DNA of 64,000 nt from Cyanophora paradoxa CCMP329 (lineage: Eukaryota; Plantae; Glaucophyta). Under the pieces are notes generated by a model that was not told where the DNA came from, did not search any database, and saw only the letters and a program-made list of their open reading frames with translations. Location of the stretch: NCBI GenBank assembly GCA_004431415.1, contig QPMI01000453.1:62001-126000 (forward strand). The letters are read 5' to 3'. Below, piece after piece: positions 8,263-21,917 of this stretch. Within the stretch, counting starts at the first letter, position 1. Every line of letters begins with the position of its first letter. The position numbers were made by a program, and so were the translations under genes.

Positions 8263-11200
8263 GAGCGGGCGGAGTGGGGCGGGGCGGAAAGAGCACCCCG
8301 ATTGAGCGGGAACTCCTAACGACGACCGCGACCGCGCGTTCCGCTCCGACTGACTCTTGCGCGACACGTCCCGCTCCGGCTGATATTCACTGACCTCCAT
8401 GCAGACGGACTGGTACGACACGCGGTGGATGAGCGCGTGTCGTGCCGGTCCATTAGAGTTCATTAGTAAAAGGAACACTAGCCTCATTAGTTCATTAGCA
8501 CACACAAGTTCATTAGTTCGTTAGTACACCGTGGCACGCGCCACCAAAAGTTTAGTACACCGTGGCACGCGCCACTTACAGCGTAGCCCTCTTCCACTAA
8601 CGGTTTGGCCTCCCTCTCGCAGACGGACTGGTACGACACGCGGTGGATGAGCGCGGCGGAGCGGGACGCGAGCCTCGCGGCGGCCGCCGAGGAGAAGGCG
8701 CGGGCCGAGGAGGCGGCCCGCAGGGGGCGCTCCACCCGCCTCGCCATCGACCTCGCCGGTCCGCTCTTGACGACGCTCAAATTAAAGCTCAGAGAGCTTA
8801 TATCTTATATATCTTATATCAAATTAAAGCCGGTCCGCTCTTGACGACGCTCCTGAAGCTTAAAAGAAGCTTGGAAGCTTAATAGATATCTTCTGCTGTG
8901 TTACCTCGCCGGTCAGCGAGCCCTTCCATCTTAGAAAGAAGCTATCCGTCGAAGAGGCTATCCATCGAAGATCTTTAGATTTGAGCTTTAAGCCTAAGAC
9001 CTCGCCGGTGGGCGGGTCTCTCTTGTATGTAGCGTGCGAAGCTCTCGTTTCTGATACCTAATCCGACACACGATCGAAGGGCGGCGCGCCCGCGTGCTGC
9101 TGGACGACGAGGCGGAGGCGCTAGAGGCGGCCCAGGCGGGGGAGGATGGCGCCGGCGGACCCGCTCAGCCCGCCCGTGCGCCCCTCCCTCCCTCGAGCTT
9201 CCTCCATCCCTCCATCCCTCACTCACGGAGCGTGCAGCGCGGGGGGAGGATTTGGTGCGGACGGTGACGCGCGGGGCGGGGACCGACGCCGCGTCCGCGC
9301 GCCTCCGCCAGGCACGGGAGCCGTACCCCCCCCCCCTCCCCCCCCTTCCCTTCTGCCCCGCCCCGCCCCCTCCTCTCCCTCTTTCTCTCCTCCCGGCTCC
9401 TGGAGCCGGCGGCTAGACCCAAAGACCTGCAGCTGCTCCCTCCCGCTTAGAGATTCAACCGCGCGCCTCCGGCAGGCAAGCTCGAGCCCCCCCGGGCCGG
9501 CCGCCGGATCCCATCATGGCATAGATCTGATCTAGAACGGATCGATCAATACCAGATCTAGAGATCCGCTCCCGCTCCCCCCGGGCTCCAGGCTCCTCCG
9601 CGATTGGGCGCCGGTTGATTACAACCGGCTGCTCAAGTTATTCCATGCTAGATTCCGACTGACTGACTGATGATCAACGGCGGGCGCAGGCGCCGCTGAA
9701 GGAGGGGGCGGGCACGGGCCTCTTCCGCAACCCCTTCCTTGCCGTCGCCGCCCCCCGCTTCGTCTCGTCGACCCCCAAGCCCGAGGCGGCCAAGAAGAAA
9801 GAGAGCAAGGCGCGGCCCCCTTTCTTCCAACCTAGCTTCCTTATAGCTTCCTTAGCTTCCTTAGACGTTAGAAGGATGGCGGCGGCAAGAAGAGCAAGGC
9901 GCGACCCGCTTTTCTTCTCGCGATCCTGACGCTCTCTCTTTCGAGGCTTTTCCTTCCTAACTCTCGATCTCTTCTCTCAGGAGGAGGGCGCGCTGGCGGC
10001 GAAGGCGGCGGCGTTCCGCGAGGGCCAGCGGGAGCTGTCGCGGGGCATGGCGACCGTCCGCGCCTTCGACGAGAACGCCCGCCGGTGCGCGCGCTTCTGA
10101 GGGCTCTGGATCTCTAAGACATTCTGTTCGATGCGCAATTATAGGCTCTCTAAGAGCTCTTTAAGACGGTCTAGGTCCCCGTCTAGATCACGGAACGCCT
10201 TTGATGAGAACGCCCGCCGGTGCTTTCGCTTTTGAGAGCTCTTTAAGACGGTCTGCTAGAGGCGCAATTACAGCTCTTAGAGGCGTGACCCCCCCCTTGC
10301 GCTTCTCCACCCCGTCTAGATACCCCCCCCCCCCCCCCCCCCCCCGCCCCCTCGAAGGGCTTCTTACGGGGGCGCGCGCGTGCGAACGAAGGGTGCTGGA
10401 GCGCGTGCAGCACGACGAGATGATCGCCTCGGCCCGGCCCCCCGCCGTGCGCGCTTCCCTTCTTCTTCTTCTTCTCCCTTCAACTCGCCTCTAAGATTCG
10501 ATTCTTCTTAGATCGAGGATCTTGAGGCGGAGCCGGAGGAACTGGCGCTGGCCTCAGGGGCCGACGAGGACGCTGACTTCTGGGGCGCCGAGCCCCGGAT
10601 TCGAATCGCCCCCCAGAAAGCGAACGTTCGCCAGAACGAGGAGGACGGGCCTGGGATGACCGAGGACGGCCCGTGCGTGGGGCGGAGGCCGGCGGCGGCG
10701 GCGGCGGCGGCGGACTCCGGCGCGGCGCTCAGCATGCACCAGCCGTGGGCGAGCCTCCTCGTCCTCGGGATCAAGCGCGTGGAGGGGAGGGGGTGGCCCA
10801 CGCCCCACCGGGGTACGCTGTGGATCGCGTCGACAGTGAAGGAGGCGGACCCGGAGGAGGTGAGGGATGTGGAGGGGTACTACTCCGCCCTCGCGCGGCG
10901 CGCGGGGCGGCCCCCGCCGGCCTTCCCGGAGGCGTACCCCTCCGGCGTCCTCCTGGGATGCGTTGACGTCACGGACTGCCTGAGCCACGAGCAGTGGACC
11001 GCGGTGCGGGGCCGGCGGCTTAAGCTCAGCTCAGTCAGTTTTTATGCCTCGCTTACGGTCGGCGCAGAGGCTAGAGGCGGGTGACTGCGCCTCTTGGCCC
11101 GAGGAGAACGACTCGCGATACGTATTCGTCTGCGAGCGGCGGCGGCGCCTCCCCGTACCCTTCCCCGTCCGCGGCCAGGCGCGCGCTCTCAGATCGATCT

Positions 11201-11326: not shown

Positions 11327-11744
11327 TCCAGTTGGATTTCGCATTAATTGCGTCTTAAGATTTGTTATCGAATATTACACGGGTTCACAATAAGCACGTG
11401 CTCGCACGGAATACGCAAAATACATGGAAATCACTCACGGAAAGCCTAAGACTGCATAACCAGCGCCCCTTGAATGAATAACGAGACGTTGCAAGAAGAA
11501 AATACTAGATCCTGACGTCACGCGAGGGATCGCTTCGCGGCGCTAGCCTATCGACGGTCTACCGTACCCCCCTTTCTCTGTCCTCGTCTGGCCTACGCGA
11601 GGCTAGCTATAAAGAGGGGCGGTGTACCGCGCGCGCGCGCGATTGGAAAAAGCGATCGGATATCGATCGGTATCGAGGCCCTCTCAAGATAAGGAAGCTC
11701 TCAGAACACTTATGTACGTTATGTAGTGGACCGATCGCGATCAA

Positions 11745-14700
11745 TCAATCGTCGTCGTCGCGGGCCGTGTTCGCGTCTGCGCTCGCGCGCCGCTCCTGCG
11801 GAGGCGGCGGCAGCAGCGTTCAGACAAAAAAAGGGTACAATATGTATGGCACAGCGAACCTGGTGCTGGTTCGCCCACCTCCAGCGCTCGACGTTCTCTT
11901 TGATGTTGGAGAGGAGGATGTCCATTGCGTTGGGCGCGATCTCCGCGACGGCCTCGTAGAGGGGCTGGACTATGTTGCCCAGGAAGAAGATCTAGAGGAG
12001 AGGAGCATAAAAAACTAAGAGGAGAAGAACATTAGAGAAGGGGAGAAGTGAGTACCTGGCGGCCCGAGGAGCCCATGTCGGGGTCATCCGTGGGCGCCAT
12101 GCCGGGGGAGACCTCGAGCCCCAGCTCCTGCTCGAGGTGCCCTTGCTCGAAGAACTCCTGCTGGATCGCTGCCGCCCAGTGCTGGCTGTTCTCGAAGGTG
12201 CGCGCCCCGTTCGCAAGGTCCGCGCACTTCAGGAGCATCGCGGCAAACAGCGTCTGAAGAGAACGAAAGGAAGTGAGACGCGGAACGGAGCAGGACTCCA
12301 AGAAAGAAAGAGAAGGAAAGCCGACCTTGTCGTCCAGGTGCGCGAGGCGCGCGCCCGGCGGTGAGGCCGCGCCGTAGAGCGGCCGCGCGGGCACGAGCGC
12401 CCCCGGCTGGACCGGGGTCAGGAACCGCGCCTTGAACGCGGCCATGTACTCCCCGTGGAGCATCATGTCCGTCGCTGAGGCAGAAGCGTAAGCTTGGACA
12501 AGACAGAAAGATAGATAGATTCTCGTTCAAAACTTCGGATCGGATCACCTAGAATGACGTCGATGACGAACTGCGTGAAGCGCTGCCGCTCCTCGGGGTT
12601 GAGCCCCGAGCAGATGTCGAGGTCGGTGCGCTCGAGGAGCACGAGGAAGCGGCTCGAGTGGTGCCGCTCCAGCGGGCTGCTGTTGCTGTACAGGAGCGCC
12701 ATCGGCGCTTTCGACTTGATGAGGAAGAGGTTCGTCAGCGCCGGGTGCTCCAGGTCTGGCGCGCTCAGATCAGATCAGAAGGCTCAGATCAGATCAGAAG
12801 GCTCAGATCAGACCGTGGGCGAGGGCCGCGATCATCAGAGCGAAAGTATCGATGTCGTCGAAGACGGGGAGCGCGGCGCGGCCGCCGGGGAGGGCCCCCG
12901 GCGCCATGTCGGCCCCCGGCGGGCCCTCGAGCGCCAAGGCCTGCCTCGGGGCCGGCCGCAGGCGCGAGATCATGTAGAACATCGCGTGCTGCGCCGAAAC
13001 AAGGTTGATTAAGTTTACGCTCAAGGGAATCAAGGATAAAAAGACTTCAAACAAAGCTATGCTAGCGAGCGCACCGAGACGTCCATTGCGTGGACCTGGT
13101 TGTGGAAGGGGTTCTTCTCGCGGTACGAGGCGAGCGCCGCCGTAATGAAGCCGTGCAGCTCCTGCGCCCGAACCTGCGCATGCGCCGAAACCAACGAAGT
13201 CAGAGGGGCGAAGACGAAGGGAAAGACTCGTCGGGGCGCGGTCCTGGCTATGGCTACGAGCTAGCCGGCCTTGGTTTTTGTGCCCTAGCCGGACTACTGC
13301 TGGGCTCAGCTGCTGACCTGGAGGCGGGAGACGACTCCGAGGGCGTCCTTTAAGGTTCTTATATGCTCTTATAGGTTCTTTAGGTTCTAAATATCTATTT
13401 TCTTATAGATTCTTTGGATTCTTCTTGTAGGTTCTGACCTGGAGGCGGGAGACGACTCCGAGGGCGTCGAGCATCTGGTGCATGAGGGCGGGGTAGCTGC
13501 CCGTCGGGAGCTGCCAGACCGCCAGGTCCGGCGAGAAGAGCCGCTCGGGGGTCTGCAGAGAGATCATAAGATAAGATTTAGGTAGGTAGAACGAAATGGA
13601 ATGTAACAAGTAAGCACCACGAAGGACTGCATGACGGCCGAGTTGCCGCGGATGTTGTGCCCCGACTGGCGCCGCATGAAAGGCGACATGGCGCTGCTGT
13701 CGGCGTTGGGCTTGACCCCCACGAGGAAGTACGTGTGCAGCTCGCCCTTGCCCTTCACCTGTACCCGCCCGCGGTCCTCGAACTCGAACTTGTACTTCAG
13801 CTGAGCGGGCGGGCGGGCGTCGGGAGGGGGGTACACTCGCACACAGAGAGAGAGAGATCGCGCAGGGGTGGGGGGTACGGTACCATCTCGTAGAGGTCGG
13901 CGGTGACCTGCGTGCGCCCGGGCACGCCGCTGCTCTCCATGCGGCTCGCCACGTTGACCGCGTCGCCCCTGCGCCGAAAACATTCGATCCGGATCGAATC
14001 CGAGAACATTCGATCCGCTTCGCTTCGTTCGCACCAGAGGTCGTAGAGGTACTTGTTCTTGCCGATGACGCCGGCGATGACCGTGCCGACGTGCATGCCG
14101 ATTCGGATGCGGAACGGCTTCCCGTCGAACGTCTTGAAGCGCGCTATGATCTCGTGCATCTCCAATGCCATTTTCTGTGGGGGGGTAGAGATGCGTCGGA
14201 TCGGGCGACGCGGGGGTACAGATGCGAACGGAAAAGGGCACCGCCATGCGCTCGACGTAGGGCTCGCGCCGCGATGAGTTGCGGTCGGGGGGTACGCCGC
14301 CGGCGCACATGAAGGCGTCGCCCAGCGTCTTGATCTTCTCCAGGCCGTATTTCTCCGCCAGGGAGTCGAACTCGGAGAAGATTTCTGAAGTCGCAGTCAG
14401 CGCCGGGAAGCCGAGCGGAGCGTAGAGCAGCGGCGGAGCGGCGGCGCACGGTTGAGGAGCGTGACCAGCTGCGCGGCGTCCATCGAGCCGGCCAGCGGCG
14501 TGAAGTTGACAATGTCGGTGAACCTGTATTGAGAGATAAGGATAATAATTAGCCAAGATCTTCAAAGGTGCTGGTCGTTTAAATCAATCAATCAATCAAC
14601 GAACATGATGGAGACGTTCTCGACGCGGTCGGCGAGAGCGCCGCGGACGGCGCCGCCGTTCCCGCGCCCCGTGGCGTTCACGATGCTGGAGGGCTTCCAC

Positions 14701-14848
14701 GACTGCTCCGCGTCCTGCATCTCCTTGAGGCGCCTGCGTGCGCCTCAAGTTAGGAGCAGGCGACTACTACTGCTGCTACTGCTAGTAGGATGCGGCTAGG
14801 AGGTTGATGATTCAGAAGATGTGGATAATTCAGTTACGAAGATGCGGT

Positions 14849-14879
<31 letters not shown>

Positions 14880-17800
14880 CCGGGCCGCGTCGCGGAGAGT
14901 TTTCAGAAAGAAATTGTAAGATGTAGAGATGATGTAGTAGCGCCTCTCTCCCCCCCCCTCTCTCTAAGAGAAGCGTCGCCTCTAAGTAGTTGTAGAACGC
15001 AACGCACTCTGCGATGCCGACGGGGAGCATGTTGCGGAGGAGGGCCTCTATCTTAGATATGTAGAGAGCGGTAGAAAGGGGGAGATGTATAGGTATCTAG
15101 GATCCTAGGATACTTTCTTTCAAGGATCCTAGAAGAAGACAACAACAAGGGCTCTCTAACTCTAAGGGGCCTCGAAGACATTGGGGCGCACTCGGCGATG
15201 CCGACGGGGAGCATGTTGCGGAGGAGCGCCTCCGTCTTCTGCCGCTCGTGCTCCAGCTCGGCTTCCATCTCCTTGCGGATCGTCACGTCGCGGATCCTGC
15301 GGGAGGGGCGGGGCGGGGCGGGGCGCGACGGGGCGGGGCGGGGCGGGGTGAGTGAGGAGGCTGAGGGTGCCGGAGAATCGGGGCGGGCAGGGGCGGGGCG
15401 GCGCGGCGCGGCGCACATCCCGATGATGAAGAAGATAGATATGGATAGACAGATAGACAGATAGATAGATAGATAGCGTATAGATAGATAGATAGAAGCT
15501 CATTAGAAGCTCTTAGAAGCTCATTAGAAGCTCTTAGAAGCTCCTTAGAAGCTCGGGCGCACATCCCGATGAAGAAGGTGCTGCCGGCGATGTGCATCTC
15601 GCTGAGGCTGATCTCGACGGGGATCTCGGAGCCGTCGCGGTGGATCCCCACGATGTCCGTCAGCGTCCCGATCACACGCTGCGGCGGGAGGAGGCAGGAC
15701 GCCCCGTCCCGTCAGGCAGGGCGGATGAGGATGGATGAGGAGGAGGAGGAGGAGGAGGAGCGCGGCAAGGCGCCCCGTCCCGTCCCGTTAGGCAGGGCGG
15801 ACGAGGACGAGGATGAGGAGGGGCGTAGGAGGAGTAGGACGAGCGGGGATGGATGGCGGGGGTGGACGAGGACCAGGATGGCATGGGGCAATTTCGATGC
15901 GTCAACATGGCAATTGTTATTATAAAGCGAAGCTTGCTGAGCTTGCTAAAGCTCGCGCACCTCGGAGCCCGTGTTGAGGTAGCGCTGGACGTACCCGTCG
16001 TGCTTGGCCGCGATCTCCGGCGGCATCAGCACGTTCACCTGCCCGCTCGCCCGGATCAAATTCGGATCAAATCAGAGGGGCGGCTCGGATCAAATCGGAT
16101 CGAATCGGATCAAATCATATCAGCGTCGCGAAGGGCGGCTCGGATCAATCGGATCAAATTGGCGGCTCGGATCAAATCGGGCGCACGTTGCGGCCGAGGA
16201 GCTCGTCCTGCTCGTAGCCGAAGAGATCCGTGGCGGAGCGGTTCATGGAGATGACGCGGCACCGCGAGTCCACCAGCACGATTGCTGGTAGGGCAGGAAA
16301 GATTAGATTAGATTAGATCCCATCGAATTCGATTAGATCCAAGCACCGTCAGGGGCTGCGTCCATGATCTGCCGCGTGCGGTACTCCTCCACGGCCGCCT
16401 TCTTGCGCGCCTCCTCGACGCGCGCGTACGCCTCGGAGACGCGCACGCTCATGCGGTTGAACGAGGCCGCCAGCTTCCCCACCTCGTCCTTCGACGTGAT
16501 CCGAACCTCCAAGCTGGAACAATAAGAAGAAGAACGTTAGATTCGGTAGGATGGATAGGATAGGATAGATTAGATAAGCGCACTTCTTCTTCATCCGCTC
16601 GAGGGACGAGGCCGCGCCGCGCCCGGCGAAGGGCCCGGCCTCGCCGCCCTCCTCGTCCTCCTCGCCGTCCTCCTCTGCATCCTCCTGGGCGGGCTGCTTC
16701 GAGGAACGGGAGGAGGAACGGTCGCCTTTGAAGAAATTCTCCACGGTCGACTGCAGCGTCGAGAGGGGCCCCGAGATGGCGCGGCCCATCCAGAGCGCCT
16801 GGGGGCGGGCGGGGGCGGGCGGGCGAGCGCGAATCAGAACCGGCGGTCCGCTACACTGCAGCGTGCTTTGGGTTCGCTCACGAGGAGGGCGGAGATGATG
16901 AAGATGGGGATGGTAGAGAGGAGCGAGACGAGGAGCGTGAACTTGAGCAGGTTGTCGGCTTCCGTGTGGGGCAGGCCCCGCACAAGGAAGGCCGCCGGCT
17001 GCCCGTTCGCGTCCGGGATCACCCGCCCGATGACCGTCATGTACGTCCCGTTGACGGCGAAGCGGGCGACGGCCGAGGAGGCCGCCCCCGCGTCCGTCGC
17101 CCTGTCCAGGAGGGTGTACCCCTCCTGGTTGCTGAGCTCGACCCCCGAGATGGCGGCCTTCCCGGGCTCGGGGCTCCACAGCGACGCGGAGAGCGCGTAG
17201 CGCGACGCCGAGGTGTCGCCCTGCTGCGAGGCCCGCTGGTAGACGGCGACGTACCCCGTCTTGAAGACCTCCATGCTGGGGGCGACCGTGTACGGCTTGT
17301 TGTTGACGACGTCCCCCGAGACGAGGATGGCGACGGGGCCCTTGGACTTGTCCGACGGGTTCGCGTACACGGGCGTCGCCACGAACCTGTCGTCGGCGAA
17401 ACAGTTAGCGAGACGCTTTGCTAATAAGCTATTAGCGAAACGAGGAAGCTTCAAACTATTAAACTATCGTAACCTATGTTAGCGACGACGACGAAACTAT
17501 ATATTGGCCGAACGACGACGCTTGACCGCAGTATCTTATCTTCTCAAAGGAAGGGCGAACGGACGGACGGACCGAACGAGCCAGAGCGTGGTCGTGTCGG
17601 CCGCGAAGAGACCCTCGGCGGCGACGAGCTCGGACCGGGGCACGAGCAGCGTGGCGGACATCTGCTTGTTCGCCTTGATGGACTTGGCGACGAGGCCGCC
17701 CAGGTTGAAGCCCTTCTCGCCCGACCGGTCCTTGTTCGCGTTCACGATGATCGCCAGCGTCTCGTCGTTCTTGACGAGCGTGGCGTACTCCTGCGAGCGG

Positions 17801-19058
17801 AGTAAAGCGCGTCAGGCGAAGCCGCTGAGCGTTGAGCGTTGGGCGTTCGGCGCCGCAGATTGGGGCGTTGTGGCTGGCGGGCGGGCGGGCGGGCGGGCGG
17901 GCGGGCGGGCGGGCGGGCGGGCGGGACGGCGGGAGGGCGGGCGGGCGTACGATGTCTCGGCGGAAGCACTCCTGCTGCAAGAGCCGTCGCGCGGCCTTTC
18001 TGGCGTCCACGGCCGCTTGCTGCGTCGATAGGCCGAGGACGCCTGCCTGGACCACGTCTGCATTCTCGGCTGACGTCTGGAGCCCGAGGGCCATCTCCCC
18101 TATCTTTATGTTGTACACGATCTCGTTGGTCAGGATCTCCGAGGCGGCGCGGGTCTCCAGCTCCTTGACCGAGGACGTGTAGAGCACGGCGACGTGCACG
18201 GATACGAGCGTCGAGATCGTCAGCAGCTGCGGTCCGGTGCGCGCGGGCGCGTGAGCGGGGCGGGGCGGGACGGGGCGGGGCGGGAGGGCGGGAGGGGCGG
18301 CGTGCGCCGCGCCGCGCCGCGCTGCGCGGGCCACACCTCGCAGAGAATGAGCGCGATGATCTGCTTCTTCCGCACCTGCGAACGGCACCGCTCGGCAGGG
18401 CGGAACGCGGCGGCGCGGCGCGGGGACACAGCGCGGGGAGCGGGGAGCGGGGCGCGGGGCGCACGTTCAGGTTGTCGTACCAGATGCCGACGCGCTTGAA
18501 AGGGTTCACGGAGCAGCCGAGGAGGTTGTCCGTCGGCTCCTGCTTCTTGAGAGTGTAGAAGGTGCCCTTCGTCGAGCTGTACTTCGCGGCCGACTTGCGC
18601 GGCATTGCGGGCAGGCGCTTCGGGCCGTCCGTGACGGACGCCTCCAGGAACATCGTCGAGAAACGGCGGCCCGCGGGGCCCCGCCCTTCCGTCGATCCGA
18701 TCGCCGAAGGGGAGCGGACCAGCTGGGGCGCTGCCGTCGGCAGCGGCAGCCGCGGCGGACGCTCGCTCGAGCTGGTTCCCGATGTACCGATGCTGTTCGC
18801 GCGGACCAGTTGGCCATGCCTGTCTCCTGGCCGATGGGGGGCGAGGCTACTGACGCCTCCGACAGCAAGCTCCTTCCGCGATCCACCAGACTTCCACGGC
18901 TTCCCGTTCTCCGCGTCAGATTCTGGTAGAGGGGACGTGTTGGACGGCTTCTTCGGCCTGCGCATGCCCGGATGCTTCCGGGTCGTCGGGGATGATGGCG
19001 CGCTGCTGGTGCGTGAGTCCGCCTGCAAAGCCGGCACAACCCGCCGCTCCCCCGGCAT
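11745..19058 (-). CDS. Membrane receptor adenylyl cyclase-phosphodiesterase fusion: TM-sensor-TM-HAMP-PAS-class III cyclase-class I PDE
   Basis: HAMP ISGPLSTLQ...SKDEVGKLAASFNRM. PAS VNVLMPPEIAAKHDGYVQRY...HRDGSEIPVEISLSE...IRDVT. Cyclase FTDIVNFT, EKIKTLGDAFM, RIGMHVG, YDLW|GDAVNVASRMES, VKGKG. PDE PFHNQVHAMDV, AH|DLEHPALTN, ATDM, KCADLAN, EFFEQG, RQ|IFFL. The exons join in frame at canonical splice sites. The start codon is tentative. Confidence 0.9.
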
Positions 19059-19644
19059 GATGGATGCCTGCTTCACCGGATGGATGCTATGCGCTCAAGC
19101 TGCCTCGCGCATGCTGGCCGAACCGCAACCTTGCAACCCTTCCGCGTTCCAGGCGGGCCGGCCCCCCGGTGCTGGTTTGAGCTCAGGTGCAAGATGTCGA
19201 TCAGTCTAGTTTGTTCTCTCGCTCTCTGCCCTCCGCACCGGCAGCTCGCTACCGGTGCTCGCTGCTTCGCGTCTTCGCAGGCGTTACAGCCAACGGATGA
19301 TACGGGGAGCTCTCTGTAGATGCTTCTGAGCCCAGCCCAGCTGCTGCTGAGCAGTCCAGGCGCCTTGACCGCAGCTGCTGAATTGCAGAGTTGTGGCCCC
19401 GTCGCAGGGGTACGCGCACTAGCACGCAATTCAGAAAGGAGCGCAGCTGCGGATGCTGTAGAAGAGCGAGCCGACAGCAACAGCAACAAGCACATGCGTA
19501 TGCTGTAGAAGAGCAAGCCGACGGCAACAGCAACGGGCGAGGGACCCCGTAGGCGCCTTCGCCAGGTTCAATGCGACCGGAGCCCGTTCCTACAACGACG
19601 ACAAGCACGCAGTCTGAGCACACGGCATACGGTGTTCCGCGGTG

Positions 19645-21917
19645 CTGCAATCATTTGCTTCTTTGACACCGATAAGCAAATCGCGTACCGCGCGGGTGCG
19701 CGCGCACGCGCCCGCCCGATCGGGGCGGCTGCCGCCGCCCCTCCGCCCGACCCGGCGCGACCCAACCCCCGCTTGTTCGCCCGCCCGCCCCCAACCCAGG
19801 ATGGCACTTTTCGCTGATCGACAACGTTTTCCTGGGAATCTACTGCTTCGAGACGGGCCTCAAGCTTTTTGTATGGCGCTGGAACTTCTTCAAGGCGCGC
19901 CGCTCAGCTTACAATTGCCATTTCCCAGCATTATAACACACCTTAGCTAAGCTTGGCTTTCGTTATGTTGAACAGGTCGGCTGGAACGTCTTCGACCTCC
20001 TCATCGTCCTGTCTTCCTTCACGGACTGGCTCCGCTTCTTCATCATGGGCATGTCCACGTCCTTCAACCCGAAGATCTTCCGACTTCTCCGCGTCCTCCG
20101 CGCGTTAAGAGCCCTTCGAGCCCTGCGGGCGCTACGCGCCATCTCTTTCCTTCAGAAGCTTCAGGTGCGTGGAAAGCGCACCTGCGGAGTAAGAAAAACG
20201 TGCGTACCCCCCTGAATCGCCTCCCCCCCCGCCCATGCAGGTGATCGTAGCGACTGTGCTGGACTCGATCCCGGCCATGGGCAGCGTCACAATGCTTCTG
20301 TTTCTCGTCCTCTGTGCGCCCGCGCCCGCCCTCGTTCGCTTCGGATCGAATCCGAGCAGGGGCTTACGGGGGGGGGATGCGCCTTTCCCGCAGACGTCTT
20401 CGCGGTCATAGGGCGGACCTCGTACGGCGACCTCATGCCCGAGCGGTGCGCGTACCCCCCGCCAGATACACCCGACACTTACCCGACCGCGTCCTCCCCC
20501 GCTCCACTCCCCTCTCCCGCCCTCCACTCACCTCTACCCAGATTCGGGAGCCTGCCGCTGACGATGATGACTCTGTTCCAGCTCATCACGCTGGACGATT
20601 GGTCCTTGTACTACGAAAAGGTGTGCCGCCGAGATCTATTTTTAGTGCGGAGGGGGGTACCCGAGTCCTTAAACTCGCTGGCTCGCTGACTCCCGCGGGC
20701 CCAGGTGCGCCTCCAGGAGCCCTCCATAATCTTCTTCTTCATCGCATACATTGTCGTCGAGACGTGCGCCCCCCCTCCATCCTTCCCGCCCCTGGGCCCC
20801 TGCCCCCTCCCCCTTCCCCTCTCCCTTCCCTAGGCGACGGCTCGGCTTCAACTCCTTCCGCCCTTTCCTCCCACCCCTTTCGGCCATGCGCTCTCCCTAG
20901 CCCCGGCACCCACTCCCCGCCCTCCCCGCCCGGCGCCCTCCGTGCGCTGACGGTACCCCTCCCCTTCTTCCCCCCCCCCCACTTCGTGCGCAGCTTCGTG
21001 TTCATCAACCTCTTCATCGCCGTGCTGCTGAACAACCTCGAGGAGACGCAGGCGAGCGGGCCCGCGAACGCTCCCCTCGCCCTCTTTCTAGATCGAATCT
21101 TAGACCTGGAGCGTTCTCCAGGAAAAAGAAGAAGCGATTGCTTTCCTGCCCTGCTAACGCTCTCCTTCCTTCCGCGGCAGGCGCGGGCCGCCAAGGCGCG
21201 GCTTCGCGCCAAGATGGCCCGCCGCAACCGCCACCACTTCGAGGGCGACGGCGGCGAGGAGGACTACGGGGGTCCCGAGGACGGGGAGGGCGCCGGGGCG
21301 CTGGGGGCGGACGGGAAGGGCGGGGAGGAGGCGCCGCAGCGGTGCGTGCGGCCCGCGCGTCTGATTCGATCTGATCTGAGCTGACGTCGTCTCGTCCGAG
21401 CAGGACCGTGGCGGACTACTACGGGCAGCATGGGCACACCCTCACGCAGCGGTGCGCTCGGCTCCGAGCCCCCCGCTCACCTGAGCCGAGCCCGCCCGAG
21501 CTCGGCCCACCTGGGTCTGAGTCTGAGCCCCGCGCAGGCAGGAGGCGCTCCTCACGTACTACTTCCAGCTCGTCGCCGCCCTCGAGAACAACGTACCCGC
21601 CTTTGCCCCCGGATCTGATCTGATCCGATCCGATCCGATCCGATCTGATCCGACCCGCCGCGCAGAGCTTCCAGTACGGTTCCCAGCAGCAGCTCATCGA
21701 CCGGCTCGTGGACGTCGTTATCGAGCGGGAGGGGGGGGAGGGCGACGGGGACGGGGACTGGGGCGGGGGCGGAGGCGGGGCCGGGGGCGGCCCCGCCTCG
21801 ACCGTCTTCCTCTCCGTTGCGGCCGCGGCCGCGCCCACGCCGACGAACGGACCGGAGGCAGACCTAGAGACGGAGTCGGACGCAGGCGGCGGCGCCGGCG
21901 CCGGCTCTGGCGCCTAG
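19645..21917 (+). CDS. Single-domain voltage-gated Ca2+ channel alpha subunit, CatSper1-like; 5' end unresolved
   Basis: S2 IDNVFLGIYCFETGLKL. FFK|VGWNVFDLLIV. S4 FRLLRVLRALRALRALRALR. Pore TLFQLITLDDWS (20570-20605). S6 FVFINLFIAVLLNNL. Stop at 21915-21917. No ATG or first half of S1 could be found. Confidence 0.85.

What the first reader, a model, noticed from the sequence alone, without database searches (positions are those of the whole stretch)
11745..19058. One polypeptide that senses, makes cAMP and destroys cAMP: receptor-HAMP-PAS-adenylyl cyclase-PDE
Seen: in-frame exons link two TM helices, HAMP, PAS, a class III cyclase and a class I (HD) PDE. Known: the cyclase keeps both metal Asp residues (FTD, GDA), the ATP-selecting Lys (KIKT) and Asp (YDLW), and NxxxR. 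The PDE keeps HNxxH, HD, TD, the KxAD Asp and the invariant Gln with its downstream Phe. Both halves therefore look active. Cyclase-PDE fusions are known (e.g. CAPE of flagellated-sperm plants has the PDE first), but I do not recognise this bacterial-style receptor front end with cyclase-then-PDE order. Inference: a self-terminating cAMP pulse or switch receptor with two inputs.
Basis: partly seen in the sequence, partly recalled or inferred. Interest (0 to 1): 0.85.

Follow-up and report, generated by a model that had tools for sequence, protein, structure and literature searches.

The report
Glaucophyte receptor fusing cAMP cyclase and phosphodiesterase
This is a real, spliced gene of the alga Cyanophora paradoxa whose single 1429-residue membrane protein carries an outside ligand sensor, a FixL-like heme (gas) sensor, an adenylyl cyclase and a cAMP-type phosphodiesterase, a little-known glaucophyte variant of the cyclase/PDE fusions already reported in diatoms and land plants.

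Summary
The minus strand 19058-11745 holds one 25-exon gene (all introns GT-AG, 4290-nt ORF, 1429 aa).

RNA-like contigs from three studies splice the cyclase exons in frame to the PDE exons. A DNA run shows none of these joints.

Domain order:
- cytosolic tail
- TM1
- double-Cache sensor
- TM2
- HAMP (with a 45-aa acidic insert)
- FixL-type heme PAS
- signalling helix
- class III cyclase (both metal Asp, ATP-type Lys/Asp, Asn/Arg)
- ~200-aa linker
- class I PDE (all PDE4D-aligned catalytic motifs kept)

The organism is Cyanophora paradoxa. Its public gene model for this locus is a truncated 653-aa cyclase-PDE.

At least seven Cyanophora gene models carry cyclase then PDE. So does one transcript of a second glaucophyte, Gloeochaete.

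The sensor and cyclase resemble cyanobacterial proteins most closely. The PDE is eukaryote-type.

Diatom "GC/PDE" proteins, with two TM helices, an extracellular stretch, then cyclase and PDE, were published in 2016. CAPE has the opposite domain order.

I found no paper describing the glaucophyte dCache-HAMP-heme-PAS-AC-PDE version.

Enzyme activities, heme binding and pulse behaviour are all inferred, not shown.

The scan noted three similar loci elsewhere in this genome.

The parts
11745..19058 (-). Whole coding region: 25 exons, 4290-nt CDS, 1429 aa. Exons (high to low): 19058-18465, 18375-18337, 18226-17951, 17790-17573, 17386-16882, 16798-16584, 16513-16347, 16284-16187, 16038-15961, 15678-15563, 15296-15192, 14733-14605, 14523-14450, 14384-14242, 14174-14035, 13968-13884, 13800-13618, 13552-13439, 13173-13075, 12988-12814, 12755-12549, 12474-12326, 12253-12056, 11991-11860, 11795-11745.
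   Evidence: Every intron is GT..AG, and the ORF has no internal stop. Fifteen joints were seen directly in RNA-like contigs, and contig pieces fix three further exon ends (16347, 16513/16584, 17384). Exons 12-25 are each found unchanged, as exact matches, in the public Cyanophora protein P0001. Exons 3-5 are collinear with paralogs P0003 and P0152.
18465..19058 (-). Exon 1: start codon (19056-19058) and a 198-aa low-complexity cytosolic N-terminal region.
   Evidence: This is the first ATG after an in-frame TGA at 19095-19097. There is no read evidence here because it lies outside the laid stretch. The region is not conserved in the paralogs. The start is inferred.
18179..18360 (-). TM1, split between mini-exon 2 (18337-18375, VRKKQIIALILCE) and the start of exon 3.
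   Evidence: Hydrophobic segment at aa ~202-227. The mini-exon has AG/GT borders in phase 0. It restores the K(R/K)KQ motif that precedes TM1 in P0003, P0152 and the cyanobacterial MCP P0383.
16954..18178 (-). Extracellular sensor of about 290 aa with a predicted double-Cache (tandem PDC) fold.
   Evidence: No Pfam hit. The Atlas features of exon 5 point to Cache families. Exons 3-5 align collinearly (29-46% identity) with P0003, P0152 and the cyanobacterial PixJ-type MCP P0383. The AlphaFold model of paralog P0003:185-540 (pLDDT 82) matches dCache ligand-binding domains such as TlpA, DctB, LuxQ and KinD at probability 1.0.
16772..16953 (-). TM2 (end of exon 5 and start of exon 6).
   Evidence: Hydrophobic segment at aa ~521-553. 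It is one of only two such segments in the protein.
16438..16780 (-). HAMP domain: AS1 'RAISGPLSTLQSTVENFFKGD', a ~45-aa acidic insert in the connector, then AS2 'DEVGKLAASFNRM'.
   Evidence: Pfam HAMP on the AS2 exon scores 24.5 bits, E 3.5e-5, just under the 25-bit cut-off. Both helices align with the HAMP domains of P0383 and of cyanobacterial cyclases. The insert is exonic in the RNA-like contigs (piece 16584-16797).
15281..16383 (-). FixL-type (heme) PAS domain across exons 7-11, with the candidate proximal His in 'AKHDGYVQRY' (exon 9).
   Evidence: A profile of the family's PAS domains hits the FixL heme domains first (1d06 at E 5.8e-32, 1dp6 at 3.4e-28), then DosP. Window exons 9 and 10 on their own also give FixL as the best PDB match. 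The His is conserved in all paralogs.
14716..15280 (-). Signalling helix / cyclase transducer segment (rest of exon 11 and start of exon 12), interrupted by a 458-nt intron.
   Evidence: Pfam HNOBA C-terminal helix, E 1.7e-4. Joint 14732>15191 is seen in three runs.
13720..14630 (-). Class III nucleotidyl cyclase catalytic domain with adenylyl-type residues (exons 12-17).
   Evidence: Pfam PF00211 at 205.6 bits on P0001 residues 47-229. Alignment with AC5 C1 and C2 shows both metal Asp, Lys (EKIKT), Asp (YDLW), Asn/Arg (NVASR), RIGMH and KGKGE. These residues are invariant in four paralogs.
13553..13617 (-). The 65-nt intron at the cyclase-PDE junction.
   Evidence: It is spliced out (CT..AC on the + strand) in X1, X2 and X8. 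It is bridged by 952-nt contigs covering 12673-14314. The joint is absent from DNA run X15.
13108..13719 (-). Linker between cyclase and PDE (tail of exon 17, exon 18, start of exon 19), which contains an RRQS motif.
   Evidence: Alignment A1. RRQS here and RRAS in P0003 fit a basophilic-kinase site but are absent in P0152 and P0006, so this is only a lead.
11917..13107 (-). Class I (HD-type) 3',5'-cyclic nucleotide phosphodiesterase catalytic domain (exons 19-24).
   Evidence: Pfam PF00233 at 206.6 bits on P0001 residues 340-618. The best solved relatives are PDE4D and PDE4B at E 3e-33. HNxxH, HDxxHP, ExHH, ATDM, CADL, EFF and Q..F are all aligned and kept. They are invariant in four paralogs.
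15003..15054 (-). Copy of the 3' end of exon 11 plus its donor site, lying inside the following intron.
   Evidence: 92% identical to 15187-15238. It is skipped by the 14732>15191 joint.
13308..13347 (-). Copy of the 3' end of exon 18 plus its donor site, lying inside the following intron.
   Evidence: 95% identical to 13429-13468. The public model P0001 appears to use it as an extra 16-aa piece (repeated DALGVVSRLQ). The RNA-like contigs (joint 13171>13437) and all paralogs lack that piece.

Best explanation
What it is:
- The locus is one nuclear gene of Cyanophora paradoxa.
- It encodes a 1429-aa, two-pass membrane receptor.
- The receptor most likely works as a parallel dimer, as HAMP, signalling-helix and class III cyclase proteins generally do.

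How it probably works (inferred):
- A small ligand bound by the extracellular double-Cache domain is relayed through TM2 and HAMP.
- A gas or redox state is read by a FixL-type heme PAS domain.
- Both signals converge on the signalling helix and set the activity of a homodimeric adenylyl cyclase.
- A complete class I phosphodiesterase follows on the same chain. It hydrolyses the product next to where it is made.
- The output would therefore be a local, short-lived cAMP signal rather than a cell-wide rise.

Family and origin:
- The gene is one member of a glaucophyte family of heme-PAS-cyclase-PDE proteins with varied membrane front ends.
- The sensor and cyclase parts most resemble cyanobacterial proteins. 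The PDE is of eukaryotic type, so the gene looks chimeric.

Shown versus inferred:
- Shown: gene structure, a single spliced transcript, domain order, conservation of catalytic residues, the existence of the family.
- Inferred: dimer, heme, ligands, both activities, the PDE substrate, signal kinetics, evolutionary origin.
For: Gene and transcript:
- 25 GT-AG exons form one open frame of 1429 aa.
- RNA-like contigs of three studies carry 15 listed joints, all CT..AC on the + strand. None is in DNA run X15.
- One 952-nt contig joins cyclase exons to PDE exons.

Domains:
- Pfam on exons and on P0001.
- HAMP alignment.
- FixL as the top solved match for the PAS profile and for two single exons.
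- dCache fold of the paralog model, with collinear alignment of the window's exons.

Catalytic residues:
- Cyclase against AC5 C1/C2.
- PDE against PDE4D.
- All of these are invariant in four paralogs.

Family:
- Cyanophora proteins P0001, P0003, P0006, P0152, P0270, P0271 and P0274 all have PF00211 followed by PF00233.
- Gloeochaete P0402 has multi-TM, FixL-like PAS, cyclase and PDE.
- The seven Cyanophora cyclase domains form one clade, SH-aLRT 98.

Affinities:
- The cyclase is 55-59% identical to cyanobacterial class III cyclases. Many of those have dCache-HAMP-PAS-cyclase.
- The only outside relative of the sensor is an MCP (P0383, E 8.6e-28). A near-identical member of its 90% cluster (P0386) sits in a PatA-CheY-CheW-MCP-CheA operon.
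Against: - No biochemical data exist for any member.
- The runs are only guessed to be RNA, and contigs cannot prove full-length molecules.
- The 5' 1.4 kb (exons 1-4, including the start codon and the mini-exon) has no read evidence here.
- The PDE substrate cannot be read from sequence. PDE4 is the best match, but cGMP-specific PDE9 scores almost as well.
- The position of B. japonicum FixL Arg220, the O2-contacting Arg by my recollection of the FixL literature, is Thr in this gene (visible in the 1dp6/1d06 alignments and in A5). O2 may therefore not be the ligand.
- The HAMP connector carries an unusual 45-aa insert.
- The Cache assignment rests on a model of a paralog. The profile comparison with cyanobacterial dCache_1 was not significant.
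- The cyclase tree does not resolve a cyanobacterial origin.
- The cyanobacterial cyclases sampled have non-FixL PAS domains.
Confidence: 0.62

Rival explanations
1. Reciprocal switch. The sensor state does not merely tune the cyclase against a constant PDE. Instead it toggles the protein between a cyclase-on/PDE-off state and a cyclase-off/PDE-on state. This is how bifunctional GGDEF-EAL proteins and histidine kinase/phosphatases behave.
For: - Both domains sit on one dimeric chain, downstream of HAMP, PAS and the signalling helix.
- The linker is conserved in length among the paralogs, once the annotation's extra 16 aa are removed.
- The order PAS-cyclase-PDE is kept in two glaucophyte genera.
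Against: - The PDE lies after the cyclase and after a low-complexity linker of about 200 aa (roughly 90 aa of it poorly conserved).
- No helix or regulatory module such as GAF, UCR or REC is recognisable that could carry a conformational signal.
- No data on regulation exist.
Confidence: 0.15
2. Cross-talk node. The cyclase makes cAMP but the PDE mainly hydrolyses cGMP, or both nucleotides. The protein would then raise one messenger while lowering the other, rather than terminating its own product.
For: - PDE4 (cAMP) is the best match, but PDE9 (cGMP), PDE3 and PDE8 follow within about three orders of E-value.
- The residue aligned with Tyr329, which by my recollection of PDE4D numbering helps fix the glutamine in the cAMP orientation, is Ser in the alignment.
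- The diatom fusion was argued to act on cGMP (PMC4726125).
Against: - The cyclase has the ATP-type Lys/Asp pair.
- The characterised fusion CAPE prefers cAMP in both halves (PMC5159850).
- Nothing in the sequence positively indicates cGMP.
Confidence: 0.1
3. One half is not catalytic in vivo. For example, the PDE domain could act as a product-binding feedback sensor, or the cyclase only as a dimerisation scaffold.
For: - An earlier, unchecked scan note (s1-515408) reports a member with a degenerate cyclase on another piece of this genome.
- P0274 scores lower in both domains.
Against: In this gene and in three paralogs, every metal, substrate and transition-state residue of both domains is kept. 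That is not expected of a pseudo-enzyme.
Confidence: 0.08
4. There are two separate proteins: a receptor cyclase and a PDE from adjacent genes. The bridging contigs would be read-through transcripts or assembly artefacts.
For: - The public annotation splits the locus, since P0001 starts inside the PAS domain.
- Contigs cannot prove single molecules, and the tool itself warns of this.
Against: - The junction is a canonical in-frame 65-nt intron, removed in three studies.
- There is no stop between the domains.
- The public model P0001 itself joins the cyclase and the PDE.
- Six other Cyanophora models and a Gloeochaete transcript have the same fusion.
Confidence: 0.03

Closest known systems
[quoted passage not shown]
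   Same: Both have a short cytosolic N-terminus, two TM helices around an extracellular stretch, then a class III cyclase followed by a class I PDE on one chain. Both form multi-gene families. Both are known only from sequence and expression. An Atlas cluster of 130 cyclase+PDE proteins, mostly from diatoms, is the nearest named cluster to P0001 (score 0.94).
   Different: The diatom proteins were read as guanylyl cyclases with a cGMP-type PDE. This one has the ATP-type Lys/Asp pair. The cited papers report no HAMP, heme PAS or Cache domain for the diatom proteins. No diatom protein appeared among the best 120 hits of either large search, so close kinship is unlikely. A common versus independent origin of the fusion was not tested.
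CAPE (COMBINED AC with PDE) of streptophytes with motile sperm (Marchantia MpCAPE; PMC5159850, PMC8115329, PMC11032487)
   Same: A class III adenylyl cyclase and a class I PDE sit in one membrane-associated polypeptide. In CAPE both activities were shown in vitro, and cAMP is preferred.
   Different: The order is opposite (PDE first, cyclase last). In CAPE the TM helices lie between the two domains. CAPE has no Cache, HAMP or PAS domain. It is restricted to streptophytes.
Cyanobacterial dCache_1-HAMP-PAS-cyclase receptors (e.g. P0285 Microcoleaceae, P0292 Coleofasciculus, P0193 Roseofilum)
   Same: They share the front-end logic TM-dCache-TM-HAMP-PAS-class III cyclase. Their cyclase domain is 55-59% identical to this one.
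   Different: They have no PDE. Their PAS domains are not FixL-type. Their dCache_1 is not detectably similar in sequence to this sensor. They are prokaryotic and lack introns.
Cyanobacterial PixJ/TaxD-type methyl-accepting protein (P0383/P0386, 'PilJ')
   Same: It is the only outside relative of the sensor domain: 34% identity over 83% of the domain, E 8.6e-28. It shows the same TM1-sensor-TM2-HAMP layout.
   Different: Its output is GAF plus MCP signalling within a PatA-CheY-CheW-MCP-CheA operon, not a cyclase or PDE.
FixL and DosP (EcDOS) heme-PAS sensors; the DosC/DosP make-and-break pair for c-di-GMP
   Same: The PAS domain is most similar to the FixL heme domains, then to DosP, and the proximal His is kept. 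As general background knowledge, DosC/DosP and GGDEF-EAL proteins pair synthesis and breakdown of a second messenger under gas control.
   Different: The outputs here are cAMP synthesis and class I PDE activity. The BjFixL Arg220 position is Thr in this gene. Heme binding is untested.

Membership tests
Class III nucleotidyl cyclase, adenylyl type (Pfam PF00211) | Catalytic-domain profile match above the curated threshold | tested here: met
   P0001 (exons 12-25 of this gene) scores 205.6 bits against a cut-off of 21.9. Five separate exons also hit PF00211.
Class III nucleotidyl cyclase, adenylyl type (Pfam PF00211) | Two metal-binding Asp residues, plus the transition-state Asn and Arg, in one chain (homodimeric type) | tested here: met
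   FTD and GDA align with ILFADI and LGDCYYC of the AC5 C1 domain. NVASR aligns with NVASR of C2. RIGMH and KGKGE are also kept.
Class III nucleotidyl cyclase, adenylyl type (Pfam PF00211) | Purine-selecting pair is Lys and Asp (ATP), not Glu and Cys (GTP) | tested here: met
   EKIKTLGD aligns with EKIKTIGS of AC5 C2, and YDLWG aligns with YDIWG. The pair is invariant in four paralogs and is also present in Gloeochaete P0402.
Class III nucleotidyl cyclase, adenylyl type (Pfam PF00211) | Measured cAMP synthesis | not testable with these tools
   This needs recombinant protein or complementation of a cya mutant.
Class I cyclic nucleotide phosphodiesterase (Pfam PF00233) | Catalytic-domain profile match above the curated threshold | tested here: met
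   206.6 bits against a cut-off of 24.8 on P0001 residues 340-618. Exons 21 and 23 also hit on their own.
Class I cyclic nucleotide phosphodiesterase (Pfam PF00233) | Metal-binding and catalytic motifs HNxxH, HDxxH, ExHH, TD and CAD, plus the invariant Gln with Phe at +3 | tested here: met
   All are aligned residue for residue with PDE4D chain 6kjz and are invariant in four paralogs.
Class I cyclic nucleotide phosphodiesterase (Pfam PF00233) | Measured hydrolysis and substrate preference (cAMP versus cGMP) | not testable with these tools
   PDE4 is the best match, but PDE9, PDE3 and PDE8 are close behind.
HAMP domain (PF00672) | Profile match | tested here: inconclusive
   The AS2 exon alone scores 24.5 bits against a cut-off of 25. 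Paralog P0003 scores 21.1 bits.
HAMP domain (PF00672) | Position directly after TM2, with AS1 (R.I..P...L...G) and AS2 (DE.G.LA..FN.M) helices | tested here: met
   Alignment A6 with four clear HAMP domains. The connector carries a 45-aa insert.
FixL-type heme-binding PAS | Closest solved relatives are heme PAS domains | tested here: met
   The family profile hits 1d06 at 5.8e-32, 1dp6 at 3.4e-28 and DosP at 1e-20, whereas LOV domains score 1e-13. Window exons 9 and 10 alone also top-hit FixL.
FixL-type heme-binding PAS | Proximal His in the motif HD.Y..RY | tested here: met
   AKHDGYVQRY aligns with EHDGYLQRY of 1d06. The His is kept in all glaucophyte members.
FixL-type heme-binding PAS | Distal Arg that contacts bound O2 (Arg220 in B. 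japonicum FixL; residue role recalled from the literature, not tested here) | tested here: not met
   The window has Thr at that column (IGTLTDIV against IGIGRIV). P0271 and P0274 keep the Arg.
FixL-type heme-binding PAS | Heme actually bound | not testable with these tools
   This needs spectroscopy of the expressed domain.
Double Cache (dCache) extracellular sensor | Sequence-profile match to Cache families | tested here: not met
   No Pfam hit on the exons or on the paralogs. hhalign against cyanobacterial dCache_1 gave probability 0.8%.
Double Cache (dCache) extracellular sensor | Long N-terminal helix followed by two PDC modules between two TM helices | tested here: met
   The model of paralog P0003:185-540 (pLDDT 82, pTM 0.75) matches TlpA, DctB, LuxQ, KinD and Mlp24 dCache domains at E down to 1.4e-8. 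The window's own exons were not folded. They align collinearly with the modelled paralog, and the Atlas lead for exon 5 agrees.
CAPE (streptophyte AC/PDE) | PDE N-terminal, TM helices in the middle, cyclase C-terminal | tested here: not met
   Here the order is TM-sensor-TM...cyclase...PDE. The CAPE layout is taken from PMC5159850.
Diatom GC/PDE | Two TM helices with an extracellular stretch, then cyclase, then PDE | tested here: met
   The diatom topology is as described in PMC4726125 and PMC8027222.
Diatom GC/PDE | Guanylyl-type cyclase residues; sequence kinship with the diatom proteins | tested here: inconclusive
   The residues here are adenylyl-type. No diatom sequence could be fetched. 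None ranks among the best 120 hits, and only the Atlas feature score links them.

The most novel reading that the evidence does not exclude
The glaucophyte proteins would be coincidence detectors. An extracellular chemical (dCache) and an intracellular gas or redox state (heme PAS, tuned away from O2 by the Arg-to-Thr change) would jointly flip one polypeptide between making and destroying cAMP. The module would have been assembled from cyanobacterial receptor parts and a host PDE early in glaucophyte history, independently of the diatom and streptophyte fusions. That would make it a third, mechanistically distinct invention of a self-limiting cyclic-nucleotide receptor.
Probability: 0.2. Interest if true: 0.8.

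Novelty: new variant of a known kind. Interest (0 to 1): 0.58.

Why it matters
Cyclase and phosphodiesterase are normally separate proteins. How cells confine cAMP signals in space and time is still an open question.

A single chain that carries a ligand sensor, a probable heme gas sensor, the synthase and the hydrolase is a natural minimal system for studying local, self-limiting cAMP signalling.

It would also add a gas-sensing adenylyl cyclase/PDE to the few known cyclase-PDE fusions (CAPE and diatom GC/PDE), in the least studied lineage of primary algae.

The mixed ancestry is of interest too. A cyanobacteria-like sensor and cyclase are joined to a eukaryotic PDE, which bears on how bacterial signalling modules were domesticated after plastid endosymbiosis.

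Practically, the public Cyanophora gene model for this locus is truncated and contains a spurious 16-aa piece, so it should be corrected.

The compact PAS-cyclase-PDE core could serve as a scaffold for engineered gas- or ligand-controlled cAMP tools.

Tried and rejected
- My first exon model was wrong in one place. It lacked the 39-nt mini-exon at 18337-18375, which I found by comparing the pre-TM1 motif with the paralogs.
- The ORF piece 'LKLPRFANSLLAKRLANCFADDR' (17387-17454), which I first took as coding, is intronic. Both RNA-like contigs stop matching at 17384, and an AG acceptor lies at 17387-17388.
- The stop-free frame across 12254-12325 is an in-frame 72-nt intron by splice signals and PDE spacing. 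It was not seen directly among the listed joints.
- The extra 16 aa of the public model P0001 were rejected, because the RNA-like contigs and all paralogs lack them.
- Pfam on the sensor exons gave nothing.
- The hhalign comparison of the sensor with cyanobacterial dCache_1 was not significant.
- The cyclase tree (quick method, 103 rows) shows one Cyanophora clade. It leaves its position between bacterial and eukaryote-type cyclases unresolved, so no donor is claimed.
- The metagenome scan with the cyclase-PDE alignment used only cyclase patterns. It returned 80 bacterial cyclase loci, none reaching the PDE part.
- Literature searches for Cyanophora or glaucophyte with cyclase and phosphodiesterase found no description of this family. 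Most subscription journals are not covered.
- RRQS in the linker as a feedback kinase site is conserved in only 2 of 4 paralogs, so it is kept as a lead only.
- The joined 1429-aa model was not sent to any search, folding or complex tool. Searches were done exon by exon by reference, or through the database proteins P0001, P0003 and P0152.
- The join was made only transiently inside one script, to count stops, length and hydropathy. It was neither printed nor saved.

Full report
**Observation**

The region is GC-rich (about 60-66%) and interrupted by many short introns. The gene lies on the minus strand.

Pfam scans of single stop-free exon pieces, given by reference, found these domains in 5'-to-3' order:
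- HAMP (16339-16512, 24.5 bits)
- PAS (16187-16303)
- the C-terminal helix of HNOBA (15188-15295)
- five pieces of the class III cyclase domain (14525-13618)
- two pieces of class I PDE (12544-12756 at 65.6 bits; 12065-12250 at 52.4 bits)

**One transcript**

I laid 5951 bases (11700-17650, within the operators' 6000-letter limit) against three RNA-like runs from three studies and one DNA run.

- The RNA-like runs hold about 0.43 of the sampled words, as expected for exons only. The DNA run holds 0.96.
- The RNA-like contigs show 15 listed joints. All have CT..AC ends on the + strand, which is GT..AG on the gene's strand. None occurs in the DNA run.
- That joint lies inside 952-nt contigs (runs X1 and X2) that run from PDE exon 21 (12673) to cyclase exon 14 (14314). 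A 185-nt contig of X8 also carries it.
- Other contigs run from 17167 or 17384 down to about 14341-14360. X8 closes the small gap inside exon 14.

Caveats:
- The 'RNA' label of these runs is the tool's guess.
- Contigs cannot prove single molecules.

**Gene model**

I combined the joints, GT-AG signals, reading frame and paralog alignments. The result is 25 exons, a 4290-nt CDS and 1429 aa with no internal stop.

Two corrections came from comparison with relatives:
- A 39-nt mini-exon (18337-18375, VRKKQIIALILCE) restores the conserved basic motif and the first half of TM1.
- The ORF stretch 17387-17454 is intronic.

Hydropathy finds exactly two membrane segments, at aa ~202-227 and ~521-553.

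The joined protein was never searched or folded. It existed only inside that script and was not printed or saved.

**Organism and public annotation**

A HMMER search of 1.84 billion representatives with exon 21 returned a 100% match, P0001. This is EukProt Cyanophora paradoxa tig00020710_g13247.t1, 653 aa.

- Exons 12-25 are each found unchanged, as exact matches, in P0001.
- P0001 starts inside the PAS domain, skips exon 11 and carries 16 extra residues.
- Those extra residues appear to come from a 40-nt copy of the end of exon 18 that lies in the next intron.
- The RNA-like contigs and all paralogs lack that piece.
- The public model is therefore truncated but already joins the cyclase to the PDE.

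**Domains in detail**

*Cyclase.*
- P0001 scores 205.6 bits on PF00211.
- Against solved structures the best matches are mammalian AC5, AC9 and AC8 and a set of shorter adenylate cyclase chains (5o5k, 4p2m, 1yk9).
- The alignment shows both metal Asp residues (as in C1).
- It also shows the Lys of EKIKT, the Asp of YDLW, NVASR and KGKGE (as in C2).
- This is therefore a homodimeric, ATP-type enzyme by the accepted residue code.

*PDE.*
- It scores 206.6 bits on PF00233.
- The best solved relatives are PDE4D and PDE4B (E 3e-33), with HNxxH, HDxxHP, ExHH, ATDM, CADL, EFF and Q..F all aligned.
- PDE9, PDE3 and PDE8 score nearly as well, so the substrate cannot be read from the sequence.
- All of these residues are invariant in four paralogs.

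*HAMP.*
- Both helices align with clear HAMP domains.
- A 45-aa acidic insert sits in the connector and is exonic in the RNA-like contigs.

*PAS.*
- A profile of the family's PAS domains finds the heme domains of R. meliloti and B. japonicum FixL first (E 5.8e-32 and 3.4e-28).
- E. coli DosP follows at 1e-20, far ahead of LOV domains.
- Even exons 9 and 10 of the window alone retrieve FixL as the best PDB match, at collinear positions.
- The His that aligns with the FixL proximal His (AKHDGYVQRY) is kept in every member. The identification of that FixL residue as the proximal ligand is my recollection, not a tool result.
- The B. japonicum Arg220 position is Thr here.

*Sensor.*
- There is no Pfam hit, and the profile comparison with cyanobacterial dCache_1 was not significant.
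- The Atlas features of exon 5 point to Cache families.
- The only outside sequence relative is a 969-aa HAMP-GAF-MCP protein (P0383, E 8.6e-28, 34% identity over 83% of the domain).
- A near-identical member of its 90% cluster (P0386) lies in a PatA-CheY-CheW-MCP-CheA operon next to a DUF4327 gene. I read this as a cyanobacterial pix/tax-type locus.
- Exons 3, 4 and 5 align collinearly with P0383.
- An AlphaFold model of paralog P0003:185-540 (pLDDT 82, pTM 0.75) matches dCache ligand-binding domains (TlpA, DctB, LuxQ, KinD, Mlp24) at probability 1.0.

**Family and distribution**

- In two searches of 5.8 billion proteins (a full-length paralog, and P0001), the only proteins among the best 120 that carry both PF00211 and PF00233 are from Cyanophora: P0001, P0003, P0006, P0152, P0270, P0271 and P0274.
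- P0006 and P0152 are neighbouring gene models on one contig.
- Among the best 150 PDE hits, one further fusion appears. It is P0081, whose cluster includes P0402 from Gloeochaete wittrockiana, a second glaucophyte.
- P0402 has a multi-pass membrane region, a FixL-like PAS, a Lys/Asp cyclase and a complete PDE.
- The conserved core is therefore heme-PAS-cyclase-PDE, with variable membrane front ends.
- The seven Cyanophora cyclase domains form one clade (SH-aLRT 98). The position of that clade is unresolved.
- The cyclase is 55-59% identical to cyanobacterial cyclases, many of which are built as dCache-HAMP-PAS-cyclase. It is 38-47% identical to eukaryotic ones.
- The PAS domains of those cyanobacterial proteins are not FixL-type.
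- The nearest PDE domains outside glaucophytes are from volvocine green algae and animal PDE4.
- The gene thus looks like a mosaic of bacterial-type sensing and cyclase parts with a eukaryotic PDE. No donor is demonstrated.

**What is already known**

- CAPE of streptophytes unites a class I PDE and a class III AC. The PDE comes first and the TM helices lie between the domains. Both activities were shown in vitro (PMC5159850, PMC8115329, PMC11032487).
- Diatoms have a published 'bifunctional GC/PDE' family. It has a small cytosolic N-terminus, two TM helices around an extracellular stretch, then the cyclase and then the PDE.
- That family is induced by a sex pheromone and was at the time thought unique to diatoms (PMC4726125, PMC8027222, PMC5485032).
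- The Atlas confirms a 130-member cyclase+PDE cluster, mostly from diatoms, as the nearest named cluster to P0001.
- The receptor-cyclase-PDE layout is therefore not new.
- What I could not find in the held literature is the glaucophyte family, its adenylyl-type residues, or its combination with HAMP, a FixL-type PAS and a dCache sensor.

**Mechanism (inferred)**

- By analogy with HAMP/signalling-helix receptors and homodimeric class III cyclases, the protein should act as a parallel dimer.
- The dCache and heme-PAS inputs would set cyclase activity.
- The tethered PDE would remove the product locally.
- Whether the PDE is constant, reciprocally switched, feedback-regulated or directed at cGMP cannot be decided from sequence. 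An RRQS motif in the linker is shared with only one paralog.
- These alternatives are listed as rivals, each with a test.

**Verdict**

- The gene is real, is one transcript, and both halves are intact.
- It is a new variant of a known kind (cyclase/PDE fusion receptors) in a new lineage with a new sensor combination.
- Earlier notes of this scan (s1-512687, s1-512868, s1-515408) report similar loci on other pieces of the same genome. This agrees with the family found here.

Noticed in passing
window 15003-15054 and 13308-13347 (minus-strand gene): Two introns each contain a near-copy (92% and 95% identical) of the last 40-50 nt of the preceding exon, together with its donor site, lying 184 and 121 nt downstream. 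One copy misled the public gene model into adding 16 residues. They could be alternative donors or traces of local tandem duplication.
   Followed up: partly
window 16584-16720 (exon 6): A 45-aa acidic, low-complexity insert (…QPAQEDAEEDGEEDEEGGEAG…) sits in the HAMP connector and is retained in the spliced contigs. Paralog P0003 has a 10-aa insert at the same point.
   Followed up: partly
window 20045-20215 (+) and onward to about 21400: The neighbouring gene on the other strand encodes an S4-like voltage-sensor repeat (RLLRVLRALRALRALRALR). It gives a weak Ion_trans hit (E 0.0024), so a voltage-gated cation channel probably lies next to the cyclase-PDE gene.
   Followed up: partly
window 10656-11084 (+): An ORF with an ASCH domain (Pfam E 5.5e-9) lies just beyond the 3' end of the gene.
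   Followed up: no
introns throughout 11745-19058, e.g. 16290-16340, 12760-12800, 17830-17950: Many introns carry short tandem motifs (GATCC/GATCTAATC-type units, CCCGCC repeats). The read tool skipped several of them as repeats.
   Followed up: no
P0271 (Cyanophora tig00021534_g22247): This paralog has two FixL-like PAS domains in tandem, both with the His motif and both with the Arg that this gene lacks. The family may therefore have diversified in gas specificity.
   Followed up: no
Atlas result for P0001: Bacteroidota have clusters of ~440-480-aa proteins that combine a class III cyclase with an HD domain (PF01966). This may be a bacterial make-and-break analogue. It is only a feature-based lead.
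   Followed up: no
window 12207 and 12703: Two single-base differences (C>G and C>T) appear in contigs of both the RNA-like runs and the DNA run. They look like strain or allele variants rather than RNA editing.
   Followed up: no
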